This document shows positions 19,643 to 57,208 of a stretch of 64,000 bases of DNA, piece after piece. The translations under genes and the position numbers were made by a program. The stretch's first letter is position 1; the number at the start of each line of letters is the position of its first letter. Below the pieces are notes generated by a model. That model was not told the DNA's origin. It searched no databases and saw only the letters and a program-made list of their open reading frames with translations. Origin of the DNA: Octopus sinensis (Eukaryota); contig NC_043002.1 in NCBI RefSeq assembly GCF_006345805.1, positions 61,504,001-61,568,000 on the forward strand, read 5' to 3'.

Positions 19643-20575
19643 TTAGTGCCTCGTTGTAACCTGGAGCGAATAGACCGTACGTCTGTTTACTGAAGTCTCT
19701 TTACAACATATTTGTTTCAGGTTGTCGCGAAATGATTTGCTTACCACAACATACAACATGAAGTTGAAAACGTTATTGATACAAGCCAGCACATCAAAGA
19801 ACAAGCAGATGGCAATATCTTTTTCATCGAGTAGGAATATTTTCAGGTAATTAATAGATGAAGGAAATGTGGTTAGGATAAAGAGTACGTTTATTGCAAT
19901 CACTGAATAAATAGTACTTTTTGACTTCTCTGAAATGTTTCGTTGCATATGTTGACCGAGGTCTGGTCGATGCAGTATTTTATACAACAAAAGGATAGAA
20001 CTTATTATCAAAATCATCCCTGGTACGAATGAATACATGATGTATACAGCACACAAAAAGTGCGTCTCATTATTTAAAAATACTGCTAGCGTTGTATACG
20101 TAACAGCAACACATACAAGAAGCAGAAGCAGTACTAGGTAAGGTTTATAACGTTGTGAAGAGTGAAATTGTGAAAATGGGCAAAATATTGCCAACAGACG
20201 TTCAAGAGATATGACAACGGTTATCCAGGAAGAATATATAAATAACGAATCAATGAATCCCGTGTATATTTCACTGCTAAAAATATCTGAAAGTGCCGTC
20301 TTAGGTTGAGAAGTAGTTGACAACCATATTGGCTTTGGTAAATATGTCGAAAGCGCAATGAAATCTACGAGTGCTAAACAATGAAGATATGGAACAACTT
20401 TTGTCTGACGCATTTGTTTCTTGAAAAATATTACGAAAATTGCTAAATTTCCGACAGATCCAAATATCAATGAAATTATTGAAACATACGGTATAATTCT
20501 AAGTAAATAAACATCTTTTTCATTTTCTGTCTGACTACTGTTGGTCAATACGCTCATCATTTCTGTTTTGTTCAT
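19643..20575 (-). CDS. Intronless class A 7TM receptor, copy A (310 aa), peptide-receptor-like/Srw-like orphan GPCR
   Basis: Seven hydrophobic segments; GSVGN (TM1), YLHCLALVD (TM2), SSWITVVISLERL (E/DRY variant), YSFVP (TM5), TTFP (TM6), NNVFNFMLY (NPxxY variant), helix 8 SKSFRDNLKQICC; N-terminal NKT/NSS sequons. Confidence 0.93.
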   Translation of the reverse strand: MNKTEMMSVLTNSSQTENEKDVYLLRIIPYVSIISLIFGSVGNLAIFVIFFKKQMRQTKVVPYLHCLALVDFIALSTYLPKPIWLSTTSQPKTALSDIFSSEIYTGFIDSLFIYSSWITVVISLERLLAIFCPFSQFHSSQRYKPYLVLLLLLVCVAVTYTTLAVFLNNETHFLCAVYIMYSFVPGMILIISSILLLYKILHRPDLGQHMQRNISEKSKSTIYSVIAINVLFILTTFPSSINYLKIFLLDEKDIAICLFFDVLACINNVFNFMLYVVVSKSFRDNLKQICCKETSVNRRTVYSLQVTTRH

Positions 20576-21249
20576 ATTTTCTTCTCATTCATCCACCGGT
20601 CAGCAATTGTGGACCACAAAAATAACTAAATGAATCCAATTTCTATTAAATTTTAAAAGATCCCATACGGTTTCACGCGTTGCTCTTTAATAACAATGTG
20701 ACACATCTAATTCGTGTCGAGCGATATCAGATAAATAAATAGATAAAATATGTAGGCAAGGAGATAGATTGGCATGTGCATATTTATATGCATGTGATTA
20801 CATGTGTACAGACATCGTTATAATGAATCCAGCTTCGTTGCTTTTGTAAAATGTACTACTACTTTTGTATTAATTACTGTATTTTAGATAACTGTGTCCT
20901 TCACGTTGTTGATGATGTGGCCATCGAAGACAATCACAATCAGGATCTTAATGATGATGATGACGATGGTGATTGCGAAGTCTATTGGGACAAAGATCAC
21001 TACTATGATGACGATGAAATTGTAAAGATGATTTCACTGGCCGGTTGACGTTGATGTTTTAACATTTTTAACAGCATGTACAACGATAGAAACTATGAAT
21101 CAATATGTCTTTCATTTTACAATACTACTTCCCAGAGGTTTGGACGCTGTTAAGTAACTGCAGTTGATCGGGTGTGGTCTTATTTTATGATTCTGCAAGT
21201 GTTAACAAAATATATTATTTGTTTAATGTACATGTTACACGGCTATTAA

Positions 21250-21750
21250 ATGAAACGACGTTCAAATATTATTACTGTCTCATACGACTTGTGAAACGAC
21301 CAAATGCATTGAACAGGTTCCCTTCGATCTTGTAAGTCATATTTTTTCCTTCGATCCTATAACACATAATTTACAACATGGTAGATATGAATGACTCCTA
21401 CTTTTGTGAGCATGGTTAATGGAATACCGCTCAACGATGCCCCAGTCATAGTAGTCAAAGTCGTTTAAATAGGAACATTGGAGGTGAAATGTTTGCGGTA
21501 ACTTGATGAGGAAAACTATCGCCCATCCACTTCAGATTTACGTAGATCGAGTGAAAATGACCAGATTCATAATAAAATACGTACGGCTTCTCAAAGGGTA
21601 ACTCTCTCAATGCAGGGCTTGAGAAACGACTTCATTGTCACGATGTAATGTACATGATCGATGCAACAATATTACTGGGGAAAAGTAAGGTGACACAGCA
21701 TGGAATTCATCGCTAACGTACGGCGATGAGTTCCTTCATTTTCAGTTGGA
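21250..21750 (-). mobile_element. Decayed Tc1/mariner-superfamily (DD37D/maT-like) transposase remnant, repeated in every unit
   Basis: In order on minus strand: ENEG..., FPQ, LKPCIERV, KPYVF, YLNDFDYYDWGIVER, NLFNAFGRFTSRM (cf. NEG..FP..VKPWI..V..RPYVFQQD..PDLNPLDY..WG..ER..ACxRFxxR). Copies at ~26030-26530, 31830-32315, 38830-39325, 49705-50535 (MITE-interrupted) and 57890-58325. Confidence 0.65.
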
Positions 21751-22199
21751 CCCGACCGCAGTCGTGTAAGTCTGAAAGCCGTGGTATACTAGCCAGACGG
21801 TGTAGGGCAGGCTTTCTTTAGGCCACCTTTTTTAGGCCACTCCCTTACTGGGGCGAGCAGTGCATTGCTAAATGTCTACTCAGTCGTCTGGGACGTTTTC
21901 TTATTCATCCGCTACACCGAGTTCGAAGATTAACAACCAAAGTCCCAAGCCGCCTACATCAGGAATGTGACTGTGACTTCCGATGGCTAATTCCACCTGT
22001 CACTTTTACCGTTGCCCCGTCACTGGAGGACTTCAGTGGAAAGTTGGGGCTGAAATACACAATGTGATATTCCCTACTGAGTGAGATCCAGCAGTTTTTA
22101 AACTTGGTCATTCCAAGTAGAGAATTTATATATAGTGTTGCCAAGACAAAGGATTTTTATTTAAAGTGACCTAAAAATAGGGATGGTATTAGAAGGGTC

Positions 22200-22560
22200 A
22201 AATCGAAAACAGGAAGAGGGGAATGAAGAAAGAAAAAAAAAGAAAGCGAAAAAAGAAGAGAAAGAAAAAATGAGAGAGGAAAAAAAGAGAAGGAGAAGAA
22301 AGTAAGATGAACCTAATAAAAAAATAACAAAATAAAAAATAAAAACAAAGAACTCTGAAAAGAGGAATGAAGGGAATAAAGAAAAAATAGAAAAGAAAAA
22401 TGAAGATATAGATCAGTCAGTGGTCAGTGGATACAATTTAAGAGTAAGAGTGGGAAGAGGAAGGGGTAAAGAGAGAAAGGTGTTCTAGCGTAAACAGATA
22501 GAAGGAATGACAAAAGTGTAGTTGTAGAGTCTAAGTGTAGAGGCAGAGATAGGGGATAGT
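22200..22560. repeat. Purine-rich (GA/A-rich) tract within the repeat unit
   Basis: Direct reading; copies at ~26980-27355, 32980-33360, 39760-40135 and 50810-51180. Confidence 0.85.
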
Positions 22561-22669
22561 AGTATGAAAACTTAAGGAATTTATATGTTTAGCAGTTCAG
22601 TGCTTCGTAATATAATTTTCACATATTGCATTTACACACACACACACACACATACACGCATACACACAT

Positions 22670-22701
<32 letters not shown>

Positions 22702-22982
22702 GTGTGTGTGTATATATATATACACACACATGTATATATATCTGTAAACGTAATATATGACAATTTTTCGATATCCATTTATAGAGATATTGTTTTATAG
22801 GTTTATTGTTCATAATTTTTACACATAATTTTTCTGTATTCTACCTTCTACCCTGCATTTTTCCCTGTGCGTATATAGACGTGTCTTACTCCCTGCTTTC
22901 TTTTACAAATTTTCATGTACTTTTGCCTTCAGTCTTGTTTTTTCTTGTACGTATGCGTCTATAGACGTGTGCATGAACTTTC

Positions 22983-23026
<44 letters not shown>

Positions 23027-24431
23027 TATATAGACGTGTGCGGGTATGTGCATATATAGACGTGCGTGCGTGAGTGCATACGGATATGTGCGTATATAGA
23101 CGTGTTTTACTCTTATGGTTTTTTCATACTTCTTTACACTTTTTTCTGTATTGTTGCCCCTAGCCCCGTTTTTGCTTGTGTTTGTGCGTATATAGACGTG
23201 TGTATGAACCGTTTTGGTTCGCGCGCGTGTGTGTGTGTGTTGAATTGTATATATATATGGTTTTGGGGGAACGGTGTGGGTGAGAATGTCTATGTTTGAA
23301 GTGGAGATGGATGAGTGTATACTTATAGGCGCATGTACGCGGGTGTACGGGCGCGCATGTGTAGGTATGGAGATGCGCTATTCACAAAAACTATGTACAT
23401 TTTACTTTTAATCCCTCCCCTCACTTAGCTGTCATTCAAATAGTTCTTTTGTCTTAATAACGATCATTCACACAATAATTTCCCATTGTTTAACGGTCGT
23501 TTTCATAGAATTTTTTCTAATGGCCGAATAACTAAATGGAGGGCGGTGTGAATTTCCACCCTGACATCCGAAACTCAGAGTTTATTATGGCTACCGAATA
23601 ATTGTCACATATCAAATTTACAGATAACTTCCTCTATTTACAAAATGTCGAGGTCTCTTCGTCTTAATATTTCTATCAATATTTATATATATAATGAGGA
23701 TAATGGGATATATTGCCCTGGTAGGAACCGAATTTCTCTGAAATCGGTTTCAGATGCTGGCTAACGAAAAGCCGCCTTATGTAGTACTCGAGCTAATGAG
23801 TTGTTAGACACTAGTAACTTCTCTCGTTGGGTAATTCTGTGCGTGCATGTTTTCCGTAGATTATTTAATAATATTAATAATGATAAGGAGAACAAAGATT
23901 TTTCACATCCAGAAACTTTATTTATCAATTCCTTAGAGTATATTCTGCGGATCTACACAGGTAAACCATGTGATTTTTGAAAGATATACATTTAAACAAT
24001 TTAGAGAAACATCGCACTGTGTATAATTATAATCATAGTAATAATTGAGAAACGAAAGCCCACCACACTATAAAATAAACCAAACACATTAGAATACCTT
24101 TACATTTATAATGTACCCTATGCAATAAGTGGAACAATAATCTATTAGAAATGGTCTAACTTTCTTAAGGAATATGTAAATAGAATGTTGAACAGGGAAT
24201 ACTAACTAGAAATTTATAAACATAGAGCATCACCATTTTGTGTAATGTATTTTAAAATACTTATATACAAACAGATATAGTTATATATTTTTATGCACAT
24301 GTAGATGAATATATGTATGTCTACATAAGCGGAATGTAGATTGATGATACATAAATTATTATCATTACGACAATTATAAATATATAAGTAGATACTTACG
24401 GAATTGATAAAGTATTGAAACAGTGAATGTC

Positions 24432-25364
24432 TTAGTGCCTCGTTGTAACCTGGAGCGAATACACATTACGTCTGTTTACTGAAGTATCTTTACAACATAT
24501 TTGTTTCAGGTTGTCGCGAAATGATTTGCTTACCACAACATACAACATGAAGTTGAAAGCATTATTGATACAAGCCAGCACATTAACAAACAAGAAGATG
24601 GCAATATCTTTTTCGTCGAGTAGGAATATTTTCAGGTAGATTATAGATGAAGGAAATGTGATAAGGAGAAAGAGTGCGTTTATTGCAATCACTGAATAAA
24701 TAGTACTTTTTGACTTCTCTGAAATGTTTCGTTGCATATGTTGACCGAGGTCTGGTCGATGCAGTATTTTATACAACAAAAGGATAGAACTTATTATCAA
24801 AATCATCCCTGGTACGAATGAATACATGATGTATACAGCACACAAAATGTACGTCTCATTATTTAAAAATACTGCTAGCGTTGTATACGTAACAGCAACA
24901 CATACAAGAAGCAGGAGCAGTACAATGTAAGGTTTATAACGTTGTGAAGAATGAAATTGTGAAAACGGGCAAAATATTGCCAACAGACGTTCAAGAGATA
25001 TGACAACGGTTATCCAGGAAGAATATATAAATAGAGAAGCGATTAAAGCCTTGTATATTTCACTGCTAAAAATATCTGAATGTGCCGTCTTAGGTTGAGA
25101 AGTAGTTGACAACCATATTGGTTTTGGTAAATATGTCGAAAGCGCAATGAAATCTACAAGAGATAAACAACGAAGATATGGAACAATTTTTGTCTGACGC
25201 ATTTGTTTCTTGAAAAATATTGCAAAAATTGCTAAATTTCCGACAGATCCAAATATCAATAATATTATTGAAATATACGGTATAGTTCTAAGTAAATAAA
25301 CATCTTTTTCATTTTCTGTCTGACTACTGTTGTTCAATACGCCCATCATTTCTGTTTTGTTCAT
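24432..25364 (-). CDS. Intronless class A 7TM receptor, copy B (310 aa)
   Basis: Same motifs as copy A; about 27/310 residues differ from A by manual count. Confidence 0.93.
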   Translation of the reverse strand: MNKTEMMGVLNNSSQTENEKDVYLLRTIPYISIILLIFGSVGNLAIFAIFFKKQMRQTKIVPYLRCLSLVDFIALSTYLPKPIWLSTTSQPKTAHSDIFSSEIYKALIASLFIYSSWITVVISLERLLAIFCPFSQFHSSQRYKPYIVLLLLLVCVAVTYTTLAVFLNNETYILCAVYIMYSFVPGMILIISSILLLYKILHRPDLGQHMQRNISEKSKSTIYSVIAINALFLLITFPSSIIYLKIFLLDEKDIAIFLFVNVLACINNAFNFMLYVVVSKSFRDNLKQICCKDTSVNRRNVYSLQVTTRH

Positions 25365-27485: not shown

Positions 27486-27576
<91 letters not shown>

Positions 27577-30288: not shown

Positions 30289-31221
30289 TTAGTGCCTCGT
30301 TGTAACCTGGAGCGAATAGACCGTACGTCTGTTTACTGCAGACTCTTTACAACATATTTGTTTCAGGTTGTCGCGAAATGATTTGCTTACCACAACATAC
30401 AACATGAAGTTGAAAGCGTTATTGATACAAGCCAGCACATTAACAAACATGAAGATGGCAATATCTTTTTTATCGAGTAGGAATATTTTCAGGTAATTAA
30501 TAGATGAAGGAAATGTGGTTAGGAGAAAGAGTACGTTTATTGCAATCACTACATAAATAGTACTTTTTGACTGCTCTGAAATGTTTCGTTGCATATGTTG
30601 ACCGAGGTCTGGTCGATGCAGTATTTTATACAACAAAAGGATAGAACTTATTATCAAAATCATCCCTGGTACGAATGAATACATGATTTGTAAAGCACAC
30701 AAAAAGTGCGTCATATTGTTTAAAAATACTGCTAGCGTTGTATACGTAACAGCAGCACATACAAGAAGCAGAAGCAGTACTAGGTAAGGTTTATAACGTT
30801 GTGGAGAATGAAATTGTGAAAACGGGCAAAATGTTGCTACCAGACGTTCCAGAGATATGATAACGGTTATCCAGGAAGAATACATAAATATAAAAGAAAT
30901 GAACGCCTTGTATATTCCACTGTCAAAAATATCTGAAAGTGCCGTCTTAGGTAGGGAAGTAGTTGAAAACCATATTGGTTTTGGTAAATATGTCAAAACT
31001 GCAATGAAATCTACAAGAGCTAAACAATGAAGATATGGAACAACTTTTGTCTGACGCATTTGTTTCTTGAAAAATATTACGAAAATTGCTAAATTTCCGA
31101 CAGATCCAAATATCAATAATATTATTGAAACATACGGTATAGTTCTAACTAAATAAACATTTTCATTATTTTCTATCTGGCTACCGTTTGTCAATACGCC
31201 CATCATTTCTGTTTTGTTCAT
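30289..31221 (-). CDS. Intronless class A 7TM receptor, copy C (310 aa)
   Basis: Same motifs as copy A; intact ATG-to-TAA ORF. Confidence 0.93.
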   Translation of the reverse strand: MNKTEMMGVLTNGSQIENNENVYLVRTIPYVSIILLIFGSVGNLAIFVIFFKKQMRQTKVVPYLHCLALVDFIAVLTYLPKPIWFSTTSLPKTALSDIFDSGIYKAFISFIFMYSSWITVIISLERLVATFCPFSQFHSPQRYKPYLVLLLLLVCAAVTYTTLAVFLNNMTHFLCALQIMYSFVPGMILIISSILLLYKILHRPDLGQHMQRNISEQSKSTIYVVIAINVLFLLTTFPSSINYLKIFLLDKKDIAIFMFVNVLACINNAFNFMLYVVVSKSFRDNLKQICCKESAVNRRTVYSLQVTTRH

Positions 31222-33473: not shown

Positions 33474-34145
33474 CAGTACATGGGTAATTATTTTATTTCG
33501 TATATTTTCACTTGTTTCTGGCTTTGGTTTTGTGCTGAGTTTGATTTGAGAACATAATCTTTGTGGAGAATGACGATTTGACGTCTATATCTAGCATGTT
33601 GACTGTGCACTTTTCGTGTTCAGTCCTTAATTGGTATATATAATTATTTTAATCTTCGGATTCTTTTTTAATATGCTAGACCACTGGTTTTAATTGATAA
33701 ATATCAATCTCTACCCTTAATCAATTTTATATAAAATAAATATGTTCTCTAACCGATAAATTGACTGCTGCTAATTATTAGCTGCAGGCTGGTGTTTTCG
33801 GGTCTCAACGCGGCAAAGTAAAGGCATTTGAAAGATACATTCGAATGTAATCGGTTGAACTCCATGCACGCGACAATCCGGTATCGTTTTTGCATCTAGT
33901 CCAGCAAATTACATTCAATACGCACCATGCTGAAGAGGTTACAGTTATCCTTGCGGATAATAATAAACGAAACTGATCAGTACATGGGTAATTATTTTAT
34001 TTCGTATATTTTCACTTCTTTATTGCTTTGGTTTTGTGCTGAGTTTGATTTGAGAATATAATCTTTGTGGAGTATGGCGATTTGACGTCTATATCTAGCA
34101 TGTTGACTGTCCACTTTTCGTGTTCAGTCCTTAATTGGTATATAT
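33474..34145. mobile_element. ~670-bp insertion with ~165-bp direct terminal repeats
   Basis: CAGTACATGGGTAATTATTTTATTTCG...CAGTCCTTAATTGGTATA at 33474-33640 and 33978-34145; sits inside the unit's (TA)/(CA) tract; unique to this unit. Confidence 0.55.
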
Positions 34146-34167
34146 TTAATATATATATATATATAAA

Positions 34168-34294
<127 letters not shown>

Positions 34295-40214: not shown

Positions 40215-40255
<41 letters not shown>

Positions 40256-40278: not shown

Positions 40279-40320
<42 letters not shown>

Positions 40321-40382: not shown

Positions 40383-41830
40383 CTAGAATTATGACCCGTC
40401 GTGCCGGGTCATAGTGCTAGTGCATGTATATATGTGTATATATGTGTACATATTACATGTACATCTATATATATATACATCTACACGTAAAATGCAAAAT
40501 ACAAAGTTATATCTTGATATCGCTAGTGATAAAAATACTCAAAATGTATAACAGACTGGAATTGTAGGCCCGTCCTACGTCCCTGATATAAAGGTGAAAA
40601 TAAAATATTTCCACTTTGCAAGGCTGGAGTCGAGTACTCCCTTGCACGCTCCGTTAACTCGAACTTTGCTTCTATTGTGGAGAATTTACCGCCTCTGGTT
40701 AGATATCTTTCATAGTCGCACCAAGATAATTTTCGATGGTGCTTTCCTCCAGGTGTTCAAATCTTTTTTTTATTCTCTACATTGTATACTTTATAGACAA
40801 TAGGCTTTTCTTTAATTTAATTTTTTTATTTCGTTGGTGATGTTATCCTAGATTCACCGCCTTTTTCGGTGATCAATCCGAAATAGGTTTGTATTTCTTC
40901 CATTTTAATTTTAATGAGTTTGCGCACGCCGACGGCTGCAGCGAAATTCAGTTTTGAACTTTCTTCTATCGAAAGCATTCCAACAAAAATTGTCAATTTG
41001 CCCAAAAAGAGACACAATTCAATTTTTAAACAATAACCAAAACTTCTTCTCCCAAAGGGGGACGGTTACAGTTTACAATTATTTAACAAATGCAACACAA
41101 CAACGTTTCCCTTACGAGGAACCAACAAACGTGATAACAATAGTTAAACAGTGAATCAAAAAGCAGTACGCAGTTGAAGATATAGTCCTTAATGTATAAT
41201 ATTCCATCTGGACTATTCCATTTCTGCACACTAATTTTATTTTTAATTTATTCCCATTCATGTGAAACCACTTATTCAAGTTCAAGTCATTGATGCAATT
41301 TTATACCAATTGTTATTTTTCCTTTTGTTATGTTACGATTATATTATACTTTAGTTTGATTTTAATTATTACTTACTACATATAATTCAATTGTAATTAT
41401 TATCTCTAATTTTTATTGTTGAAGTGAAAGTATCTGACATAAAATAGAGAAATGCTTTGTCTCACTTTTAACACGTAATACTGAAATAGTGGAGATGATA
41501 TGATATTGCATGGGCTCGACCTAGGCAAGAATTTGAACATTTCTTTTGCCCATGAAACTACATGGACCCTAAGTAAGGCATGTGTAAAATTTGAATGAAA
41601 ATGGTTATGTAGTTCTCAAGTTTAAGGAAATCGTAGTGGAGAAGATATGATATTGCTGTGGGCTTGCCCTAGGCGAAAAGTTAAAAATTATTTTTTGCCA
41701 ATGACACTTCCCGGACCCTAAGTAAGACATGTATAAAATTTGAATGAAATTAGTTGTATAGTTCTCAACTTTTAGGGAAAAACACAGACAGACAGACAGA
41801 CACACATTCTCAGTTTTATATGTTTAAAGA
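40383..41830 (-). mobile_element. Non-autonomous Helitron H2
   Basis: A|TCTTTAAACATATAAAACTGAG ... ATGACCCG GCACGA CGGGTCAT AATT CTAG|T: TC start, 8-bp hairpin, CTAG end, A/T target, no TSD. Confidence 0.88.
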
Positions 41831-42495: not shown

Positions 42496-42800
42496 AGAAA
42501 ACAAGGACAAGTCATTCGAAATTTTCTTTCCTCAATCAAGTACCAGATTATCTTCACAATTTCGGCTGATTATACTTGAGATTGCTCTAATCTGGTGAGG
42601 CCCAAGGAAATACTAAGCTAACAGCATTAGGTTCCTTGGAAAAAAGCAGCGAATGCACACAAAAACATAAACAAGGACAGAAAAAACGGACAATATTACA
42701 CAAATTCAATAAAAATAACAGGACATAAAAACAGGTCTCTTTCGACTAAGGACGAATTGAATTAAGCTGGCGTGTGTGGAAATGAAGCCCCACGGCAGGT
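42496..42800. mobile_element. Unclassified interspersed repeat abutting GPCR copy G
   Basis: AAACAAGGACAAGTCATTCGAAATT...TCAAGTACCAGATTATCTTCACAATTTCGGCTGATTATAC...CTGGTGAGGCCCAAGGAAA recurs at 63885-64000. Confidence 0.6.
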
Positions 42801-42802
42801 GC

Positions 42803-42856
<54 letters not shown>

Positions 42857-43689
42857 TGCCGCGTATAAAACAATGTTGATAGCATTATTAACACACGCTA
42901 ACATATCCAAGAATGTAATAAATACGTTGTCACTTTGTGACAGAAAAACCATTAGAAAGTAATGTATAGACACAGGAAAGGTTGTAAACGAAAACAAACT
43001 ACTAGTTGTTATCACTAGGTATACAGAATGTTTTGATTGTGATGTAGATCTTCGTTGAACATTCTGGCCAAGTTTCGAAGGCTGGAGTATTTTATAAATC
43101 ATGAGAATAGACATGAGGAATAATACTATAGCAGGTAGAAAAGAATATAATACGATTGCAACACACAATTTGTATTCATAATTGTTTATAAGAGGCATAA
43201 TCATTGCGTAAATTATAGCAACACAGATCAGAATTGCAAACACTACCATGTAAGGTTTATATCGCCCTGAAGAATAAATTCTAGAAAAGGTATGCAAAAT
43301 TGCTCCCAGCCGTTCAATTGATATGAGTACCGTAATCCAGGAGGAATATATATTAAAAAACAATGACATGATCTCCACAGTTAGACTGGATAATATATTG
43401 GTATCTGGAGCCAATAATTGTAGAGAATAAGATACCCGTATGATTCTCGGAGAGATCAGAAAAATCAAAATCATGTCTACTGAAACTAGACATAGGAGAT
43501 AGGGAACGAATTTATACTTACGCATATTCTTCCTGTAAAAAGTTGCCATGGCTGTTATATTCCCGATAGTTCCAAACGTAAATAGCATTATAGAACAATA
43601 TCTTATGGACGTAATGAAATAAATATTTGCATGATTAACTTCCAGGCTATTGTTGGTCACTGTATCCTTTTAGTTATGTGATTTACCAT
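42746..43689 (-). pseudogene. Divergent old-type class A GPCR copy G: TM1-TM7 open, start out of frame, helix 8 replaced by (TA)n
   Basis: ORF 42746-43660 begins at GTG behind an in-frame TAA (43670-43672); the nearest ATG (43689) is 29 nt upstream. After NNAINIVLYAAV the frame runs through (TA)n (IY repeats) instead of SKSFR. Confidence 0.7.
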
Positions 43690-43738
43690 TATATAATATG
43701 TAGAGTATTCTTGGCAAAACTAAATAAATTTTAACCTT

Positions 43739-43777
<39 letters not shown>

Positions 43778-43860
43778 ATAATATAATATAAATAATATAT
43801 AAATATATGCATATATACATACATATATGTACACACATATTATATATAATATATATATAT

Positions 43861-43938
<78 letters not shown>

Positions 43939-44440
43939 GCATATATGGGTACAATACATAAAAAAAACGCTGAACACAATGAGTAACGAAAACATAAAAA
44001 CAAAAACATAGTAACGAACTTTTTTTCGAAAAACAAATAAAACAGAGAAACGAGACATACTACTTAAAGAATATTTCCCTTCTTCAGTTGTTCCTGTTTC
44101 AACTACGCCGCTTTCGAAGGCTATGACAAGATGCGACTTCGTTGAAACAGCTCTTCCCGCAAAGCAAACTTAATAAAATTTGTATTTTGTTTTTAGGGTG
44201 AAAGTGGTATCATGAACAGAACAGTGAGAACAAAACAGTAAAAAAGAAACGGCGAGGGCTGTTAAGCCAAGACGATAGAAAAATAATTATGAATGCTAGA
44301 ATGACGAGCTGATGAATGAGGCCGTATAAGCACGTTTAGTCTTTACGAAGGTTGTGGGTAGAAAGGTAGATTCTATTTCGTCATGTGTCAGCGACGAGAG
44401 AGTCTACGAAGAGGAGTGAGAGGGAGAGAGAACGGTGAAC

Positions 44441-44476
<36 letters not shown>

Positions 44477-44760: not shown

Positions 44761-46185
44761 CAGTTGCGGCCAAAATGTTTAGAACGGCATTGTTTTCGTC
44801 AAAAAAGTAGATATAATTTTTTATCAAAGTTGTTTTATATTCTATAATTATCACAGACTATAAATACAATATTAATGTCATTGTCTGAGAATTTGGTGTA
44901 ATTTGAGAGGATAATACAAAAGTTATGGATGATTTAGTGATTTACTGCAAAACCGTTGGCGGCCAATATGATCAGAACGGTTGAAAAAAAAAATCAAAAA
45001 TGACAGAGAATACTGGAATTATTTAATATTTAGTGTGAAGCCCTTTAGCTTCAATCACACTCTGACATCTTCGACTGCATGAGGAAATTAAATTTTCAAT
45101 TTCTTCCTGGATGATTCCATCTTATTCCATTCTTTTTGAAGGGCATTCCATAATTGCTCAGTTGTTTTAGGATTTCTGGCTTTCGAACGTTCTCCTAGAA
45201 TATTCCACACATTTTCAATAGGATTGAGATCTGGGCTTTGAGCTGGCCAATCCATAACAATAACCTTTCAGCTTTGAGGAAGTTCATGACCACCTTAGCC
45301 TTGTGACATGGGGCATGTCCTGCATGAATATGGGTGGTTCGCTTAGTTGAATTTCTCAGCACAGGCAAGACATGATCTTTTACAAGTTGTTTATAAACTC
45401 CTGCATTTAACTTTCCATGTAATCGCACCAAAGGGCCCACACCATCTCCAGATATCATTCCCCAAACCATGACACTTCCTCCACCGAATTTAACACTAGT
45501 CTTAAGGCATTAAGGCAACAATTTTTCACCTACTTTTCTACGAACGTACATTTTCCCATCTGAGCCAAATAGCATAAATTTAGATTCATCACTGAAATGC
45601 ACCGTTTGCCATTTTTCTTAAGACCACAACACATGTTCGGTTCAAAGGTAAGACGACACTTTTTATTCTTGGAGCTGATCAGTGGCTTCCCTGCAGGTGT
45701 TCTTGCTTGTAGGTCATGTTCAACTAAACGACGAGACAGTTTTTCGAGTTAAAGTTTTCTTCAATACAATGCTCATTTTCCGAGAAACAGCTGCAGTTTT
45801 AAATCTGTCCTTTTTACCCAACTTTACCATAGCACGATCTTCTCTCTTGGTTGTTTTTCTTGGCCTACCTGTAAACGTTCTAGCTTCACACGAACCACAA
45901 TCATCGTAGACCTTAAGAATACCGTGTACAACACTTTTTGACTTGTTAACAATCTTTGCAATAGATCCAGTACTTAAATTATCCTTCCTTCGAAGCTTAA
46001 TAACCTGCTGACGAATTGGTAACGGAGTAAGTGGCATTATATTAACAAAGTACACTGCAAATATTCTTACTAATGTTTAGTAAACGAACCGTCACGTAAA
46101 CAAATCCAAAACATTAGAGTTCGCCGATTAAATATACTAAAACACAGAGTAAAAGCAACCGTTCTGATCATTTTGGCCGGAACTG
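44761..46185 (-). mobile_element. Tc1-family DNA transposon, full length but frameshifted (transposase remnant 45023-46037)
   Basis: TA|CAGTTGCGGCCAAAATGTTTAGAACGG ... CCGTTCTGATCATTTTGGCCGGAACTG|TA. Protein fragments: HTH region with GRPRKTT, FSDESKF, GGGSVMVWG, APCH, WPAQSPDLNPIENVW, SVIEAKGLHTKY*. Confidence 0.92.
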
Positions 46186-46301
46186 TATATATACTTGTAG
46201 AGGTAGGTACGTACATATATGCATGTATACAGGCATATGTTTTATTTATTAATTTATTATATGACGGAACGCACGCATCCATTTCTAAGTAAGATTATTC
46301 T

Positions 46302-46412
<111 letters not shown>

Positions 46413-46659
46413 AATATAAATATGACAATTATTCGGAAGCCATTTATAGAGATATTGTTTTATAGGTTTATTGCTCATAATTTTTACACATGCTTTTTCT
46501 GTATTCTACCTTCTACCCTGCAATTTTCCCTGTGCATGTATAGACGTATCTTACTCCTTGTTTTTTCTTTACAACTTTTCCTGTATTTTTGCCTACAGTT
46601 TTGTTTTCTCTTGTACATGTGCGTCTATAAACGTGTGTATGAACTTTCTGTGCATGTGT

Positions 46660-46708
<49 letters not shown>

Positions 46709-48103: not shown

Positions 48104-49036
48104 TTAGTGCCTCGTTGTAACCTGGAGCGAATACACCTTACTTCTTTTTACTGCAGACTCTTTACAACATATTTGTTTCAGGTTGTCGCGAAATGATTTG
48201 CTTACCACAACATACAACATGAAGTTGAAAACGTTATTCATACAAGCTAGAACACTAAAAAACAAGTAGAGGACCATATCTTTTTCATCGAGTAGGAATA
48301 TTACCAGGCAATTAATAGATGAAGGAAATGTGGTTAAGAGAAAGAGTGCGTTTATTGCAATCACTGCATAAATAGTACTTTTAGACTGCTCTGAAATTTT
48401 CCGTTGCAAATGTCGACCGAGGTCTGGTCGATGGTGTATTTTATACAACAAAAGGATAGAACTTATTATCAAAATCATGCTTGGTACGAATGAATACATG
48501 ATGTCTACAGCACACAAAAAGTACGCCTTAATATTTAAAAATACTGCTAGCGTTGTATACGTAACAGCAACACATACAAGAAGCAGAAGCAGTACTAGGT
48601 AAGGTTTATAACGTTGTGAAGAATGAAATTGTGAAAATGGGCGACATATTGCCAACAGACGTTCCAGAGATATGACAACGGTTATCCAGGAAGAATATAT
48701 AAATATAGAAGAAATGAAAGCATCGTATATTTCACTGCAAAAAATACCTGAATGTGCCGTGTTAGGTTCAGGAGCAGCTAACAACCAGATTGGTTTTGGT
48801 AAATATGTCGAAAGCGTAATGAAATCTACAAGAGCTAAACAATGAAGATATGGAACAATTTTTGTCTGACGCATTTGTTTCTTGAAAAATATTGCAAAAA
48901 TTGCTAAATTTCCGACAGATCCAAATATCAATAAAATTATTGAAACATACAGTATAGTTCTAAGTAAATAAACATTTTTAACATTTTCAATCTGGCTACT
49001 GTTGGGCATTTCGCACATGACTTCTGTTTTGTTCAT
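48104..49036 (-). CDS. Intronless class A 7TM receptor, copy E (310 aa from ATG 49036)
   Basis: Track start 49057 is GTG; the ATG aligned with the other copies gives 933 nt; all motifs intact. Confidence 0.92.
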   Translation of the reverse strand: MNKTEVMCEMPNSSQIENVKNVYLLRTILYVSIILLIFGSVGNLAIFAIFFKKQMRQTKIVPYLHCLALVDFITLSTYLPKPIWLLAAPEPNTAHSGIFCSEIYDAFISSIFIYSSWITVVISLERLLAICRPFSQFHSSQRYKPYLVLLLLLVCVAVTYTTLAVFLNIKAYFLCAVDIMYSFVPSMILIISSILLLYKIHHRPDLGRHLQRKISEQSKSTIYAVIAINALFLLTTFPSSINCLVIFLLDEKDMVLYLFFSVLACMNNVFNFMLYVVVSKSFRDNLKQICCKESAVKRSKVYSLQVTTRH

Positions 49037-50505: not shown

Positions 50506-51297
50506 AATGTCGCTTAAATTGGAGAGATTGGAGGTGAAATGTTAGCGGTAACAAAGTCCCAAGCCGCCTATATCAGGAATGTGACTATGACTTCCGATGG
50601 CTACATCCACCTATCACTTTCACCATTGCCCCGTCACTGGAGGATTTCAGTGGAAAGTTGGGGCTGAAATACACAATGTGATATTCCCTACTGAGTGAGA
50701 TCCAGCAGTTTTTAAACTTGGTCATTCCAAGTAGAGAATTTATATATAGTGTTGCCGAGACAAAGGCTTTTTATTTAAAGTGACCTAAAAATAGGGATAG
50801 TATTAAAGGGTCAAATCGAAAACAGGAAGAGGGGAATGAAGAAAGAAAGAAAAAAATAAGCGAAAAAAAAGAGAAAGAAAAAATGAGAGAAAAAAGAGAG
50901 AAGAAGGAGAAGAAAGTAAGGAGAAATTAATAAAATAATAATAAAATAAAATATAAAAACAAAAAACCCTGAAAAGAGAAATGAAGGGAATAAAGAAAAA
51001 ATAGAAAAGAAAAATGAAGATATAGATCAGTCAGTGGTCAGTGGATACAATTTGAGAGTAGGAGTGGGAAGATGAAGGGTTAAAGGGAGAGAAAGGTGTT
51101 CTATTGTAAAAAGATAGAAGGAATGACAAATGTGTAGAAGTAGAGTGAAAGTGTAGGGGCAGAGATAGATGATAGTAGTATGAAAAATTAAGGAATTTAT
51201 GTTTAGCAGTTCAGTGCTTAGTAATATAATTGTCAAATATTGCATTTACACACACACATACACATATATATATATTTACATATATATATTACATATA

Positions 51298-51343
<46 letters not shown>

Positions 51344-51351
51344 ATATATAT

Positions 51352-51404
<53 letters not shown>

Positions 51405-51409
<5 letters not shown>

Positions 51410-53057: not shown

Positions 53058-53064
<7 letters not shown>
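51405..53064 (-). mobile_element. Truncated Penelope-like element (GIY-YIG remnant 52064-52561) with a ~330-bp inverted duplication
   Basis: KNIWLIIPY...KSNL...FRQAIARNFP...KVRIGFSNTKNLLQII...SIYQCII...FYIGST...KRISIH. 51517-51845 is the reverse complement of 52736-53064. Inserted in the unit's (TA)n tract. Confidence 0.8.
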
Positions 53065-53130
<66 letters not shown>

Positions 53131-53197
53131 ATATATATAAATGTAATATATGACAATTATTCGGTAGCCCTTTATAGAGATATTGTTTATAGGTTTA

Positions 53198-54673
53198 CTA
53201 GAATTATGACCCGTCGTGCCGGGTCATAGTGCTAGTGCATGTATATATGTGTATATATATATATATATGTACATATTACACGTACATCTATATATATACA
53301 TCTACACATAAAATGCAAAATACAAAGTTATATCTTGATATCGCTAGTGATAACAATACTCAAAATGTATAACAGACTGGAATTGTAGGCCCGTCCTACG
53401 TCCCATATATAAAGGTGAAAATAAATTATTTCCACTTTGCAAAGTTGGAGCCAAGTACTCCCTTGCACGCTGCGTAGACTCGAACTTTGCTTCTATTGTG
53501 GAGAATTTACCGCCTCTGGTTAGATATCTTTCATAGTCGCACCAAGAAACCTTTCGATGGTGCTTTCCTCGAGGTGTTCAAATCTTTTTTTTTTCTCTAC
53601 ATTGTATACTTTATAGACAATAGTCTTTTCTTTAATTTAATTTTTTATTTCGTTTGGTGATGTTATCCTAGATTCACCGTCTTTGTCGGTGATCAATCCG
53701 AAATAGGTTTGTATTTCTTCCATTTTAATTTTAATGAGTTTGCGCCCGCCGACGGCTGCAGCGAAATTCATTTTTTGACTATCTTCTATCGAAGGCATTC
53801 TAACAAAAATGCTTCCTTGTAAATGGTGAAAACATTGTCAATTTACCCAAAAAGAGACACAATTCAATTTTTAAACAATAACCAAAACTCCTTCTCCCAA
53901 AGGGGGACGGTTACAGTTTACAATTATTTACCAAATGCAACACAACAACGTTTCCCTTGCGAGGAACCAACAAACGTGTTAACAATAGTTAAACAGTGAA
54001 TCAAAAAGCAGTACGCAGTTGAAGATATAGTCCTTAATGTATAATAGTCCATCTGGACTATTCCATTTCTGCACGCTAATTTCATTCTTAATTTATTCCC
54101 ATTCATGTGAAACCACTTATTCAAGTTCAAGTCATTGATGCAATTTTATAACAATTGCTATTTTTCCTTTTGTTATGTTACGATTATATTATACTTTAGT
54201 TTGATTTTAATTATTATTTACTACATATAATTCAATTGTTATTATTATCTCTAATTTTTATTGTTGAAGTGAAAGTATCTGACATAAAATAGAGAAATGC
54301 TTTTGTTTCACTTTTAACACGTCATACTGAAATAGTGAAGAAGATATGATATTGCTATGGGCTCGCCCTAGGCAAGAAGTTGAACATTTCTTTTACCCAT
54401 GAAACTACATGGATCCTAAGTAAGGCATGTTTAAAATTTAAATGAAATTGGTTATGTAGTTCTCAAGTTTTAGGAAATCGTAGTGGAGAAGATATGATAT
54501 TGCTGTGGGCTTGCCCTAGGCAAAAAGTTAAAACTTAATTTTTGCCGATGACACTCCCCGGACCCTAAGTAAGGCATGTGTAAAATTTGAATGAAATTAG
54601 TTGTATAGTTCTCAAGTTTTAGGGAAACACACAGACAGTCAGACACACATTCTCAGTTTTATATATATAAAGA
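53198..54673 (-). mobile_element. Non-autonomous Helitron H3
   Basis: A|TCTTTATATATATAAAACTGAG ... ATGACCCGGCACGACGGGTCATAATTCTAG|T; same site as H1 and H2. Confidence 0.88.
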
Positions 54674-56275
54674 TTGCTCATATTTATTACACATACTTTT
54701 TCTGTATTCTAGCTTCTACCCTGCATTTTTCCCTGTGCGCTAATAGACGTGTCTTTCTCATTGATTCCTTTTACAAGTTCTCGTGTATTTTTGCCTTCAT
54801 CCTTGTTTTATCTTGTACATGTGCGTCTATAGACGTGTGTATGAACTTTCTGTGCGTTTGTGTGTGCTTATATAGACGTGTGTGGGTTTGCGCATATATA
54901 GACGTGCGTGCGTGAGTGCATACGAGTGTGTGCGGATATAGACGTGATTACTCTCATGATTTTTTTCATACTTCTTTACGCTTTTTTTCTGTATTGTTGC
55001 CCCTAGCCCTGTTTTTTCTTGTGTTTGTGCGTTTATAGTCGTGTGTATGAACCGTTTTGGTTCGCGTGTGTGTGTGTGTGTTGAATTGTATATATATATG
55101 GTTTTGGGGAATAGTGTGGGTGAGAATGTCTATGTTTCAAGTGAAGATGGATGAGTGTATACTTATAGGCGCATGTACGTGGGTGTACGGGCGCGAATGC
55201 GTAGGTATGGAGATGCGCTTACACAAAAACTTTGTACATTTTTACCCCCTACTTTTAATCCCTCCCTCACTTAGCGGTCATTCAAAGAGTTCTTTTGTCT
55301 TAATAACGATCAATCACACAGTGATTTCCCATGGTTTACGGTCGTTTTCATAGACTTTTTTCTAATGGCCGGATAACTGAATGGAGGGCTGTGTGAATTT
55401 CCACCCTAACATCCGAAACTCAGAGTCTTATCATGGCTACTGAATGATTGTCACATATCAAATTTACAGATAAATTCCTCTATTTACAAAATGTCGAGGT
55501 CTCGTCGTCTTACTATTTCTATCAATATATATATAATGAGGATAATGGGATATATTGCCCTGGTAGGAACCGAATTCCTCTGAAATCGGTTTCAGATGCT
55601 GGCTAACGAAAAGCCCCCTTATGTAGTACTCGAGCTAATGAGTTGTTAGACACTAGTAACTTCTCTCGTTGGGTAATTCTGTGCGTGCATATTTTCCGTA
55701 GATTACTTAATAATATTAATAATGATAAGGAGAACAAAGATTTTTTCACATCCAGAAACTTTATATTCAATTCTTAGAGCATATTCTCCGGATCTACACA
55801 GGTAGACCATGTGATTTTTGAAAGATATACATTTAAACAATTTGGAGAAACACATCGCACTGTGTATAATTATAATCATAGTGATAATAGAGAAACGAAG
55901 TTCCACGTCACTATAACATAAACCAAACACATTAGAATACCTTTACATTTATAATGTACCCTATGCAATAAGTGGAACAATAATCTATTAGAAATGGTCT
56001 AACTTTCTTAAGGAATATGTAAATAGAATGTTGAACCGGGAATACTAATTAGAAATTTATAAACATAGAACATCACCATATTGTGTAATGTATTTTAAAA
56101 TATTATATACAAACATAGATATAGTTATATATTTGTATGCACATATAGATGAATATACGTATGTCTACATAAACGGAATGAAGATTGATAATACAAAAAT
56201 TATTATCATTACGACAATTATAAATATATAAGTAGATACTTACGGAATTGATAAAGTATTGAAACAGCGAATGTC

Positions 56276-57208
56276 TTAGTGCCTCGTTGTAACCTGGAGC
56301 GAATACACATTACGTCTGTTTACTGCAAACTCTTTACAACATATTTGTTTGAGGTTGTCGCGAAATGATTTGCTTACCACAACATACAACATGAAGTTGA
56401 AAACGTTATTCATACAAGCTAGAACACTAAAAAACAAGTAGAGGACCATATCTTTTTCATCGAGTAGGAATATTACCAGGCAATTAATAGATGAAGGAAA
56501 TGCAGTTAGGATAAAGAGTACGTTTATTGCAATCACTGCATAAATAGTACTTTTTGACTGCTCTGAAATTTTCCGTTGCAAATGTCGACCGAGGTCTGGT
56601 CGATGCTGTATTTTATACAACAAAAGGATAGAACTTATTATCAAAATCATCCCTGGTACGAATGAATACATGATGTCTACAGCACACAAAATGTACACCA
56701 TTTTATTTAAAAATACTGCTAGCGTTGTATACGTAACAGCAACACATACAAGAAGCAGGAGCAGTACAATGTAAGGTTTATAACGTTGTGAAGAATGAAG
56801 TCTTGAAAACGGGCAAAATATTGCCAACAGACGTTCCAGAGATATAATAACGGTTATCCAGGAAGAATATATAAATATAGAAGAAATGAAAGCATCGTAT
56901 ATTTCACTGCTAACAATATCTGAATGTGCCGTCTTAGGTTGAGAAGTAGTTGACAACCATATTGGTTTTGGTAAATATGTCGAAAGCGCAATGAAATCTA
57001 CAAGAGATAAACAATGAAGATATGGAACAATTTTTGTCTGACGCATTTGTTTCTTGAATAATATTGCAAAAATTGCTAAATTTCCGACAGATCCTAATAT
57101 CAATAATATTATTGAAATATACTGTATAGTTCTAAGTAAATACACATTTTTATAATTTTCTATCTGGCTACTGTTGTTCAATACGCCCAGCGTTTCTGTT
57201 TTGTTCAT
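56276..57208 (-). CDS. Intronless class A 7TM receptor, copy F (310 aa; possible 317 aa from in-frame ATG 57229)
   Basis: Track start 57250 is GTG; ATG 57208 aligns with the other copies; all motifs intact. Confidence 0.92.
   Translation of the reverse strand: MNKTETLGVLNNSSQIENYKNVYLLRTIQYISIILLILGSVGNLAIFAILFKKQMRQTKIVPYLHCLSLVDFIALSTYLPKPIWLSTTSQPKTAHSDIVSSEIYDAFISSIFIYSSWITVIISLERLLAIFCPFSRLHSSQRYKPYIVLLLLLVCVAVTYTTLAVFLNKMVYILCAVDIMYSFVPGMILIISSILLLYKIQHRPDLGRHLQRKISEQSKSTIYAVIAINVLFILTAFPSSINCLVIFLLDEKDMVLYLFFSVLACMNNVFNFMLYVVVSKSFRDNLKQICCKEFAVNRRNVYSLQVTTRH

What the first reader, a model, noticed from the sequence alone, without database searches (positions are those of the whole stretch)
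19643..57208. Recently expanded cluster of 'lidless' orphan GPCRs: almost no ECL2 and no TM3-ECL2 disulfide
Seen: six intact, intronless ~310-aa receptors in which R3.50 to P5.50 spans only 59 residues. TM4 (LVLLLLLVCVAVTYTTLAVFL) joins TM5 (FLCAVYIMYSFVP) through ~5 residues, and position 3.25 is Ser in all six young copies and in G. Established: rhodopsin and beta2-AR span 80 residues here and most class A GPCRs have the C3.25-ECL2 disulfide; melanocortin receptors are the best-known exception with an open pocket. The TM motifs (SxWxTVxxSxERL, NxxxNFxLY, SKSFR) place these in the FMRFamide-receptor-like/Srw-like group, expanded as candidate chemoreceptors in molluscs. Inference: a lineage-specific receptor family with an open orthosteric vestibule, possibly chemosensory. 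Cys5.40 and Cys7.43 are kept even in the divergent copies P1 and G and may have an alternative structural or sensing role.
Basis: partly seen in the sequence, partly recalled or inferred. Interest (0 to 1): 0.85.

Follow-up and report, generated by a model that had tools for sequence, protein, structure and literature searches.

The report
Octopus receptor genes lacking the lid loop
This octopus-type DNA holds a tandem array of ten related cell-surface receptor genes, six intact, whose family has lost the loop and disulfide bond that normally cover a receptor's ligand pocket; the architecture is real, kept by selection and rare, but what the receptors sense is unknown.

Summary
The minus strand carries ten copies of a class A GPCR: six intact single-ORF genes of 307-310 aa and four decayed copies. 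In every copy whose frame can be followed (the six plus G and P1), R3.50 to P5.50 is 59 residues. A usable AlphaFold2 model (pLDDT 77) joins TM4 (144-167) to TM5 (170-201) through two residues, N168-N169. Position 3.25 is Ser and no ECL2 cysteine exists.

A profile search of 1.84 billion proteins shows this state is derived. The parent superfamily (W3.41, ERx, TTxP, NFxxY; Pfam Srw/7tm_1) has a median spacing of 78. C3.25 is present in 114 of 125 relatives with spacing above 62, and in 0 of 20 with 62 or less. A sister group is intermediate (63-70, disulfide mostly kept).

The six genes are young (dS 0.07-0.13) and under selection. Indels are about 30 times rarer than in the flanks and there are no stop codons. 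Amino-acid changes concentrate in the extracellular half (omega about 1.2 against 0.44).

All named close relatives are uncharacterised Octopus bimaculoides proteins. The chemosensory role, the open pocket and expression remain inference. Verdict: a new variant of a known kind, of moderate interest.

The parts
19643..20575 (-). Copy A: intact single-ORF GPCR gene, 310 aa
   Evidence: ORF; Pfam Srw 6.6e-13 and 7tm_1 1e-08; AF2 7TM model with pLDDT 77
20060..20074 (-). Codons for N168-N169-E170-T171-H172 of copy A: the whole TM4-TM5 connection. Only N168-N169 are non-helical in the model.
20273..20275 (-). Codon for Ser101 of copy A, position 3.25, where the parent superfamily has Cys
24432..25364 (-). 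Copy B: intact, 310 aa, 91% identical to A
30289..31221 (-). Copy C: intact, 310 aa
37296..38219 (-). Copy D: intact, 307 aa. It has one in-frame 9-bp deletion in ECL1, the only indel among the six coding sequences.
48104..49036 (-). Copy E: intact, 310 aa from the conserved ATG at 49036. It has an unpaired Cys at 3.24.
56276..57208 (-). Copy F: intact, 310 aa from the conserved ATG at 57208
42746..43660 (-). P1: an old divergent copy (42% identical to A) lying inside the young array. The ancestral ATG is lost, a stop lies just upstream, and the end of TM7 and helix 8 are replaced by a TA-type microsatellite (IYIYIY...). Probably a pseudogene. It keeps the 59 spacing.
2898..3812 (-). G: a 55%-identical copy with two in-frame stops (at the W3.41 codon and in ICL3). 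Pseudogene. Spacing 59, Arg at 3.25.
7573..8410 (-). psi1: a frameshifted copy, about 44% identical
58687..59605 (-). psi2: a copy with a frameshift and stops, about 42% identical
18902..23146 (.). Tandem duplication unit around copy A. It aligns at 83-92% to the units around B-F, non-coding flanks included.

Best explanation
This is a tandem array of an octopod-lineage subfamily of class A GPCRs. The subfamily belongs to the FMRFamide-receptor-like / Srw-like / GPR139-related supergroup. During its history it deleted about 20 residues of extracellular loop 2 and lost both cysteines of the TM3-ECL2 disulfide, so TM4 and TM5 now form a tight helical hairpin.

Shown here:
- The deletion lies in ECL2. 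ICL2, TM4 and TM5 have normal lengths.
- The state is derived, with a sister group of intermediate length.
- The state is old. It is shared by clusters only 30-40% identical to each other.
- The six young copies are kept as open reading frames by selection. Their intracellular, G-protein-facing half is constrained. Their extracellular half changes at about the neutral rate or faster.

Inferred:
- With no lid and no tether, the pocket is shallow and solvent-exposed, as in melanocortin and MRGPR receptors.
- The copies signal through G proteins. R3.50, helix 8 and the intracellular loops are conserved.
- The copies differ in ligand specificity.

My committed reading is that they are receptors for a diverse set of small or peptide ligands. 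These are most likely external chemical cues (contact or water-borne). A diversified endogenous peptide set is the main alternative.
For: - Gene integrity: six complete ORFs. Indel events run at 0.36 per kb in the coding sequences against 10.7-13.5 per kb in the flanks, at similar substitution levels (92% against 88-92% identity). In a neutral simulation the chance of no stop codon is 0.05-0.18 per copy.
- Differential constraint: 47% of extracellular-half positions vary among the six copies against 18% of intracellular-half positions (Fisher p = 4e-7). Omega is 1.21 (bootstrap 0.69-2.06) in the outer half and 0.44 (0.27-0.75) in the inner half. Helix 8 shows 0/13 variable positions, ICL3 0/6 and ICL1 1/9.
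- Architecture: the spacing is 59. The AF2 model has pLDDT 77 and pTM 0.77, TM4 at 144-167 and TM5 at 170-201, with pLDDT 85-87 across residues 161-180. The fold is generic class A, with TM-scores of 0.65-0.74.
- Derived state: relatives have a median spacing of 78 and usually C3.25. The insertions in relatives map between A residues 155 and 180.
- Phylogeny: in an NJ tree the short clade is one group, with a 63-70 sister group that contains O. bimaculoides proteins.
- Superfamily assignment: Pfam Srw and 7tm_1. A profile of the family and its wider relatives (alignment A2) finds GPR139 as the second-best solved match, and GPR139 shares the NFxxY and W3.41 motifs with the family. The literature places FMRFamide-type receptors as sister to GPR139/142, with aromatic or amidated peptide ligands (PMC8557429).
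- Analogues: MC4R has an ECL2 of about 4 aa and no disulfide (PMC6685040). MrgD has a short ECL2, lacks C3.25 and C45.50, and has a shallow exposed pocket (PMC9287403).
Against: - There is no expression, ligand or signalling evidence. The one relative's contig that I read in full is genomic, bounded by (AT)n.
- Overall dN/dS of 0.4-1.1 is also what relaxed constraint gives. The bootstrap interval for the outer half includes 1.
- Four of the ten copies are already dead.
- Gene conversion between copies (mosaic flank identities) may distort dS.
- The open pocket was not measured. The roughly 18-residue N-terminus or ECL1 (which has a short helix at 94-99) could partly cover it.
- The tree is an unsupported NJ tree.
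- The taxa behind the unnamed Logan and ENA relatives are unknown, so 'octopod-specific' rests on the named subset only.
Confidence: 0.55

Rival explanations
1. The genes encode endogenous neuropeptide or transmitter receptors. On this reading the array serves a diversified set of internal peptides, for example amidated aromatic-ended peptides as for FMRFamide-type, myoinhibitory-peptide and proctolin receptors. It does not sense external chemicals.
For: The supergroup's characterised members are peptide receptors (PMC8557429). The closest solved structures by profile and by fold are peptide and amine receptors. Ritschard et al. found cephalopod class A expansions nested among neuropeptide-receptor clades and expressed largely outside the brain, in testes and gills as well as nervous tissue. 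The best-known lidless receptors, the MCRs, bind peptides.
Against: Six paralogues at dS of about 0.1, with the ligand-facing half changing at or above the neutral rate, is unusual for conserved peptide-receptor pairs. No matching expansion of a peptide precursor is known to me. Birth-and-death turnover (4 of 10 copies dead) is typical of chemoreceptor arrays.
Confidence: 0.27
2. The array is decaying under relaxed selection. On this reading the six ORFs are intact only because they are young, and the short loop has no present function.
For: Pairwise dN/dS is 0.37-1.12. Coding-sequence identity is about the same as flank identity. Four neighbouring copies are pseudogenes.
Against: Indels are about 30 times rarer in the coding sequences than in the flanks, and the single one is in frame. 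The neutral expectation of no stop codon is 5-18% per copy, or about 1e-6 for all six if treated as independent, which overstates the case because the copies share history. The intracellular half has omega 0.44, with an upper bound of 0.75. The ECL2-less design persists across clusters only 30-40% identical to each other.
Confidence: 0.1
3. The receptors are ligand-independent or constitutively active, or they act as accessory subunits. On this reading loss of the ECL2 lid and tether removes the normal restraint on activation, as suggested by the high basal activity of MCRs and MrgD.
For: MrgD, which has a short ECL2, shows high basal activity. MC4R signals without ligand and has an endogenous inverse agonist (abstract listed). 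The octopus family also lacks W6.48 (TTFP) and P7.50 (NFxxY).
Against: TTxP and NFxxY are features of the whole superfamily, including members with a long ECL2. They are therefore not linked to the loop loss. Diversification of the extracellular half is hard to explain without ligands.
Confidence: 0.06
4. The short loop is an artefact of reading the ORF, and transcripts splice an extra ECL2 exon into the TM4-TM5 junction.
For: None found.
Against: The ORF is continuous, and the model folds it as a confident TM4-turn-TM5 hairpin. The same 58-61 spacing occurs in 16 independent 50%-identity clusters from other assemblies. Any insert would have to interrupt a helix-turn-helix.
Confidence: 0.02

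Closest known systems
FMRFamide-receptor-like / Srw-like class A GPCRs (Pfam PF10324 7TM_GPCR_Srw), expanded in molluscs and other Lophotrochozoa
   Same: Both Pfam models are matched: Srw above its gathering score in all six copies, and 7tm_1 in five, with copy C just below. The copies share SSW (W3.41), ERx, TTxP, NFxxY and an F-R helix-8 motif with 4698 relatives found by the family profile. Like these relatives they are single-ORF and in tandem arrays, as described for lophotrochozoan lineage-specific expansions (PMC11886862).
   Different: The superfamily norm is C3.25 plus one or more ECL2 cysteines and an R3.50-P5.50 spacing of about 72-98. PMC11886862 describes the ECL2 of these expansions as long, 25-30 residues. 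This clade has spacing 58-61, a 2-residue loop and no cysteine at 3.25.
Vertebrate GPR139 (solved, e.g. PDB 7vug) and GPR142
   Same: GPR139 is the second-best solved sequence match of the superfamily profile (E = 3e-38). It shares NFFLY, W3.41 and the absence of Cys at the 3.25 column. Counted in the printed alignment, its spacing is 69, which is already short. The literature places GPR139/142 as sister to the protostome FMRFamide, MIP and proctolin receptor supergroup.
   Different: GPR139 still has an ECL2 of about a dozen residues. It is a single conserved gene, not a diversifying tandem array.
Melanocortin receptors (MC1R-MC5R)
   Same: ECL2 is about four residues, the TM3-ECL2 disulfide is absent, and the extracellular vestibule is large (PMC6685040; PMC9287403).
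   Different: There is no close sequence or fold affinity: MCRs are not among the top matches. MCRs have Met at 5.50 and an ECL3 disulfide. The octopus family keeps P5.50 (P185) and has no extracellular cysteine pair. The resemblance is convergent, not membership.
Mas-related GPCRs (MrgD, MRGPRX)
   Same: ECL2 is short, C3.25 and C45.50 are absent, and the ligand site is shallow and solvent-exposed (PMC9287403). From my own knowledge, not checked here, MRGPRs are also a lineage-specific, tandemly expanded sensory family.
   Different: MRGPRs have a compensating C4.64-C5.33 disulfide. The octopus proteins have no cysteine at the TM4 end or the TM5 start (AVFL-NNETH-F). The two are unrelated within class A.

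Membership tests
Class A (rhodopsin-like) GPCR, Pfam 7tm_1 | Seven TM helices plus helix 8, and a Pfam 7tm_1 score above the gathering threshold | tested here: met
   7tm_1 scores are 32.6-39.7 bits against a cut-off of 30.5 in five copies; copy C scores 30.1. The AF2 model has seven helices plus H8. Foldseek TM-scores to solved class A receptors are 0.65-0.74.
Class A (rhodopsin-like) GPCR, Pfam 7tm_1 | Anchor residues N1.50, D2.50, R3.50, P5.50, P6.50 and Y7.53 | tested here: met
   N43, D71, R126, P185, P238 and Y275 are conserved. W4.50, W6.48 and P7.50 are replaced (L, T and F), as in the whole superfamily.
Class A (rhodopsin-like) GPCR, Pfam 7tm_1 | C3.25-ECL2 (C45.50) disulfide, present in more than 90% of class A receptors (PMC9287403) | tested here: not met
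   Position 3.25 is Ser in A-F and P1 and Arg in G. There is no cysteine in the 2-5-residue loop.
Srw-like / FMRFamide-receptor-like supergroup | Pfam PF10324 score above the gathering threshold | tested here: met
   44.6-52.6 bits against a cut-off of 22.2 in all six intact copies. P1 fails.
Srw-like / FMRFamide-receptor-like supergroup | Shared motifs W3.41 (SSW), E/D-R-x, T-T-x-P and N-F-x-x-Y | tested here: met
   The motifs are present in the window copies and in nearly all of the 150 best profile hits.
Srw-like / FMRFamide-receptor-like supergroup | Phylogenetic grouping with experimentally characterised FMRFamide, MIP or proctolin receptors | not tested
The GPR139 link comes from the profile search and from the literature.
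Melanocortin receptor family | Very short ECL2 without the TM3-ECL2 disulfide | tested here: met
   comparator from PMC6685040
Melanocortin receptor family | Met instead of Pro at 5.50, an ECL3 intraloop disulfide, and sequence relatedness | tested here: not met
   P185 is kept, ECL3 has no cysteine pair, and MCRs are absent from the best fold and profile matches.
MRGPR family | C4.64-C5.33 disulfide replacing the canonical one | tested here: not met
   The TM4 end, turn and TM5 start read ...TLAVFL-NNETH-FL..., with no cysteine before C175 (5.40).
Animal chemoreceptor (functional class) | Expression in chemosensory cells and activation by external chemicals | not testable with these tools
   No transcript data are available. 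The only contig of a relative that I read is genomic. Accession searches in the paper library found nothing.
Animal chemoreceptor (functional class) | Birth-and-death tandem array with diversification of the ligand-facing surface | tested here: inconclusive
   The array has ten copies, four of them dead. Outer-half omega is 1.2 against 0.44 for the inner half, but the outer interval includes 1.

The most novel reading that the evidence does not exclude
Octopods carry a third, independently evolved 'lidless' class A GPCR architecture, after the melanocortin and Mas-related receptors. It arose stepwise: ECL2 first shortened with the disulfide kept, then both were lost. It now serves as a fast-evolving chemoreceptor family in suckers, the olfactory organ or skin, complementing the known ionotropic chemotactile receptors of octopus. 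A second short lineage in the same superfamily (P0054, P0113, P0120) would suggest that this superfamily is predisposed to lose the lid, perhaps because W3.41 packing stabilises the bundle without the disulfide.
Probability: 0.2. Interest if true: 0.7.

Novelty: new variant of a known kind. Interest (0 to 1): 0.45.

Why it matters
ECL2 and its disulfide to TM3 are among the most conserved extracellular features of class A GPCRs. They shape ligand access, selectivity and activation. Natural families that dispense with both are few: melanocortin receptors, MRGPRs and, in part, GPR139.

This octopus clade offers a new natural experiment with built-in controls. It has a long-loop parent, an intermediate sister and a loop-less clade within one superfamily, so one can ask how a 7TM bundle stays stable and activatable without the lid.

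For cephalopod biology it flags a specific, selectively maintained and rapidly diversifying receptor array. The array is a candidate for GPCR-based chemosensation, which surveys have considered reduced in cephalopods (PMC11886862).

It is not a new kind of molecule. Close relatives are already annotated as uncharacterised proteins in O. bimaculoides.

Tried and rejected
- The first structure prediction, with 12 close sequences, was too weak to use on its own (pLDDT 54).
- The word-indexed protein search found only 5 hits with one sequence and 21 with a profile. The exhaustive representative search was needed instead.
- An exact look-up of copy A in public assemblies found nothing.
- Contig look-ups for P0001 and P0005 gave 1.2-1.5 kb Logan contigs from one run, SRR11869391. 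The P0001 contig, which I read, is bounded by (AT)n and so is genomic. Neither look-up gives expression evidence or a taxon name.
- The P0169 locus gave no useful context.
- The run accession and the O. bimaculoides accessions appear in no paper or supplement in the library.
- A single-sequence PDB search gave only marginal hits.
- An apparent 360-bp palindromic dispersed repeat turned out to be (TA)n microsatellites.
- The 225-aa ORF at 15389-16066 is translated low-complexity repeat, not a gene.
- I considered a TM5-TM7 disulfide or a sensing role for C5.40 and C7.43. I rejected it as a family feature because of poor conservation. The distance between the two residues in the model could not be read, because coordinates are not exposed.
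- I considered membership of the melanocortin family and rejected it (see the membership tests).

Full report
**What is in the window.**
All the receptor genes are on the minus strand. ORF listing and tblastn find ten related copies.

Six copies are intact single ORFs:

| Copy | Coordinates | Note |
|---|---|---|
| A | 19643-20575 | 310 aa |
| B | 24432-25364 | 310 aa |
| C | 30289-31221 | 310 aa |
| D | 37296-38219 | 307 aa |
| E | 48104-49036 | 310 aa from the conserved ATG |
| F | 56276-57208 | 310 aa from the conserved ATG |

They are 82-91% identical to A in protein.

Four copies are decayed:

- G (2898-3812) is 55% identical and has two in-frame stops.
- psi1 (7573-8410) is frameshifted.
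- psi2 (58687-59605) has a frameshift and stops.
- P1 (42746-43660) is 42% identical and sits inside the young array. It has lost the ancestral ATG, a stop lies just upstream, and the end of TM7 and helix 8 are replaced by a TA-type microsatellite.

The whole 5-8 kb unit is duplicated, flanks included, at 83-92% identity.

The nearest named protein is from Octopus bimaculoides (66% identity). The window's own proteins are not on record.

**The observation.**
All six intact copies pass the Pfam gathering score for 7TM_GPCR_Srw. Five also pass it for 7tm_1, and copy C falls just below.

- The E-R-L motif puts R3.50 at residue 126, and P5.50 is P185. The spacing is therefore 59 in A-F, G and P1.
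- Position 3.25 (residue 101) is Ser in A-F and P1.
- The TM4-TM5 junction reads ...TLAVFL-NNETH-FLCAV....
- A first AlphaFold2 run on 12 close sequences was poor (pLDDT 54). A second run on 27 sequences gave pLDDT 77 and pTM 0.77. It has TM4 at 144-167 and TM5 at 170-201, with pLDDT 85-87 across the junction.
- By DSSP the loop is two residues, N168-N169. ICL2 (132-143), TM4 and the first 15 residues of TM5 have ordinary lengths, so the missing 20 or so residues are ECL2 itself.
- The fold matches solved class A receptors generically (TM-scores 0.65-0.74: orexin, MCH, somatostatin, opioid, adrenergic). It has no special affinity to melanocortin receptors.

**Is it unusual, and is it derived?**
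A profile of the family was searched against 1.84 billion representative proteins. It found 4698 relatives. I aligned the best 150 to the family HMM.

- Nearly all share W3.41 (SSW), E-R-x, T-T-x-P and N-F-x-x-Y, so those motifs define the wide superfamily.
- Among the 145 relatives with both anchors, the R3.50-P5.50 spacing ranges from 58 to 98, with a median of 78.
- The extra residues in relatives fall between A residues 155 and 180. They usually contain a cysteine.
- C3.25 (allowing one column either side) is present in 114 of 125 proteins with spacing above 62. It is present in 0 of 20 with spacing of 62 or less (Fisher p = 5e-17).
- In an NJ tree without support values, 17 of the 20 short proteins and the eight window copies that could be placed form one clade. 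Its sister group has spacing 63-70, mostly keeps the disulfide cysteines, and includes O. bimaculoides proteins XP_014770947 and A0A0L8GGA3.
- The history therefore looks stepwise: about 78, then 63-70 with the disulfide, then 58-61 without it.
- A second small short lineage (P0054, P0113, P0120; spacing 62, no C3.25) lies elsewhere in the tree. This points to recurrence.
- Members of the short clade are as little as 30-40% identical to each other, so the design is old and has survived many duplications.
- Every named member is an uncharacterised O. bimaculoides protein. The unnamed ones come from Logan and ENA assemblies whose taxa I could not determine.

**Are the six genes functional?**
- Pairwise dS is 0.07-0.13 and dN/dS is 0.37-1.12.
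- Substitution identity in the coding sequences (92%) is about the same as in the flanks (88% upstream, 92% downstream).
- Gap events run at 10.7-13.5 per kb in the flanks against 0.36 per kb in the coding sequences. The one coding indel is an in-frame 9-bp deletion in D.
- I placed each copy's observed number of substitutions at random on the consensus. The chance of keeping the ATG and gaining no stop was 5-18% per copy. The reading frames are therefore maintained by selection.
- Amino-acid variation is not uniform. 47% of extracellular-half positions vary against 18% of intracellular-half positions (Fisher p = 4e-7). Helix 8, ICL3 and ICL1 are almost invariant.
- Omega is 1.21 (bootstrap 0.69-2.06) for the outer half and 0.44 (0.27-0.75) for the inner half.
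- This shows purifying selection on the G-protein side. On the ligand side it shows neutral-to-positive change. Positive selection is not proven.
- Mosaic flank identities suggest gene conversion or unequal crossing-over, which may bias dS.

**How it most likely works.**
Three things are shown: the receptors have the full class A signalling core, they have no ECL2 lid and no TM3 tether, and their outer half is diversifying.

The rest is inferred by analogy with the two known lidless families. These are MC4R (ECL2 of about four residues, no disulfide, large vestibule; PMC6685040) and MrgD (short ECL2, no C3.25 or C45.50, shallow solvent-exposed site, low-potency ligand, high basal activity; PMC9287403). 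By that analogy the octopus pocket should be open and shallow, with fast ligand exchange and possibly raised basal activity.

The supergroup's characterised members bind peptides ending in amidated aromatic residues. Its vertebrate sister GPR139 responds to aromatic amino acids and to peptides (PMC8557429). In the profile search of solved structures GPR139 is the second-best match. It shares NFFLY and W3.41, lacks Cys at the 3.25 column, and already has a spacing of 69. The alpha1A adrenoceptor, the top match, has a spacing of 72 (counted in the alignments). Aromatic amino acids and short amidated peptides are therefore reasonable first ligands to test.

Whether the cues are external (chemosensory) or internal (peptidergic) cannot be decided here. 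I give the external reading a modest edge because of the birth-and-death array and the pattern of diversification.

**Comparison with the literature.**
- Cephalopod-specific class A expansions in tandem clusters, with signs of positive selection, are known (Ritschard et al. 2019, PMC6408891).
- A 238-genome survey reports that lophotrochozoan lineage-specific class A sets, cephalopods included, lack the TM3-ECL2 disulfide. It describes their ECL2 as long, 25-30 residues (PMC11886862).
- I found no paper that describes a near-absent ECL2 in a cephalopod or mollusc receptor family. None mentions the accessions of the O. bimaculoides relatives.
- The genes and the general category are therefore known. 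The loop-less architecture and its stepwise origin appear to be undescribed in the library searched.

- G is a pseudogene and has Arg at 3.25.
- There are ten copies, not eight.
- Cys5.40 is conserved in only 3 of 17 short-clade clusters and Cys7.43 in 9 of 17. The superfamily norm at 7.43 is Tyr. A special conserved role for the two cysteines is not supported.
- The rhodopsin and beta2-adrenoceptor spacings of 80 agree with my memory but were not recomputed here.

**Verdict.**
This is a new variant of a known kind, with interest 0.45.

Noticed in passing
window 13508-13951 (+) and 17267-17845 (+): A reverse-transcriptase fragment (RVT_1, E = 3e-7) and, 3.3 kb downstream on the same strand, a GIY-YIG nuclease-like ORF (E = 2e-4, just under the Pfam cut-off). 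Together they suggest a degraded Penelope-like retroelement in the 12-kb gap between psi1 and copy A.
   Followed up: partly
window 60756-61625 (-): A 289-aa ORF with an RVT_1 domain (E = 6e-22) lies in the only GC-rich stretch of the window (45% GC at 60-62 kb). It is a retroelement remnant next to psi2.
   Followed up: partly
window 965-1242, 8650-8799, 9780-9985, 16950-17268, 34139-34290, 43742-43946, 46304-46423, 51264-51406: Long (TA)n microsatellites recur between the gene copies. A TA-type repeat has overwritten the 3' end of P1 (IYIYIY..., about 42780-42850). The Logan contig of a relative, L001, is also bounded by (AT)n. They may mark breakpoints of unequal crossing-over.
   Followed up: no
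window 41487-41776 and 54333-54623: Two arrays, each of two 149-bp units with nearly the same consensus, lie about 1-2 kb on the low-coordinate side (3', gene sense) of P1 and of F. They could be a dispersed element or part of an older duplication unit.
   Followed up: no
flanks of copies A-F (600 bp 5', 700 bp 3'): Similarity is mosaic. The 3' flanks of B-F are 93-96% alike, while A's is about 85% to all of them. The 5' flanks pair C with D at 95.7%. The coding sequences pair A-B, C-D and E-F. This suggests gene conversion or staggered unequal crossovers.
   Followed up: partly
copies A-D, residues 169-171 (in A: window 20063-20071, minus strand): The mini-loop carries an N-x-T glycosylation sequon (NET or NMT) in A-D. 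It is lost in E (IKA) and F (KMV). It lies so close to the membrane that its use is doubtful.
   Followed up: no
proteins P0054, P0113, P0120 (representative library): This is a second lineage of the same superfamily with spacing 62 and no C3.25. It does not group with the octopus short clade in the NJ tree. ECL2 loss may therefore be recurrent. The taxon is unknown.
   Followed up: partly
window 45720-46055 (-): A 111-aa ORF has a weak match to the paired-box helix-turn-helix (E = 1e-3, below the cut-off). It may be a remnant of a Tc1/mariner-type transposase N-terminus.
   Followed up: no
window 15389-16066 (-): The 225-aa 'ORF' is a translation of CA/TA-rich low-complexity repeat (HTHTHT..., IYIY...). 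It is not a gene.
   Followed up: yes
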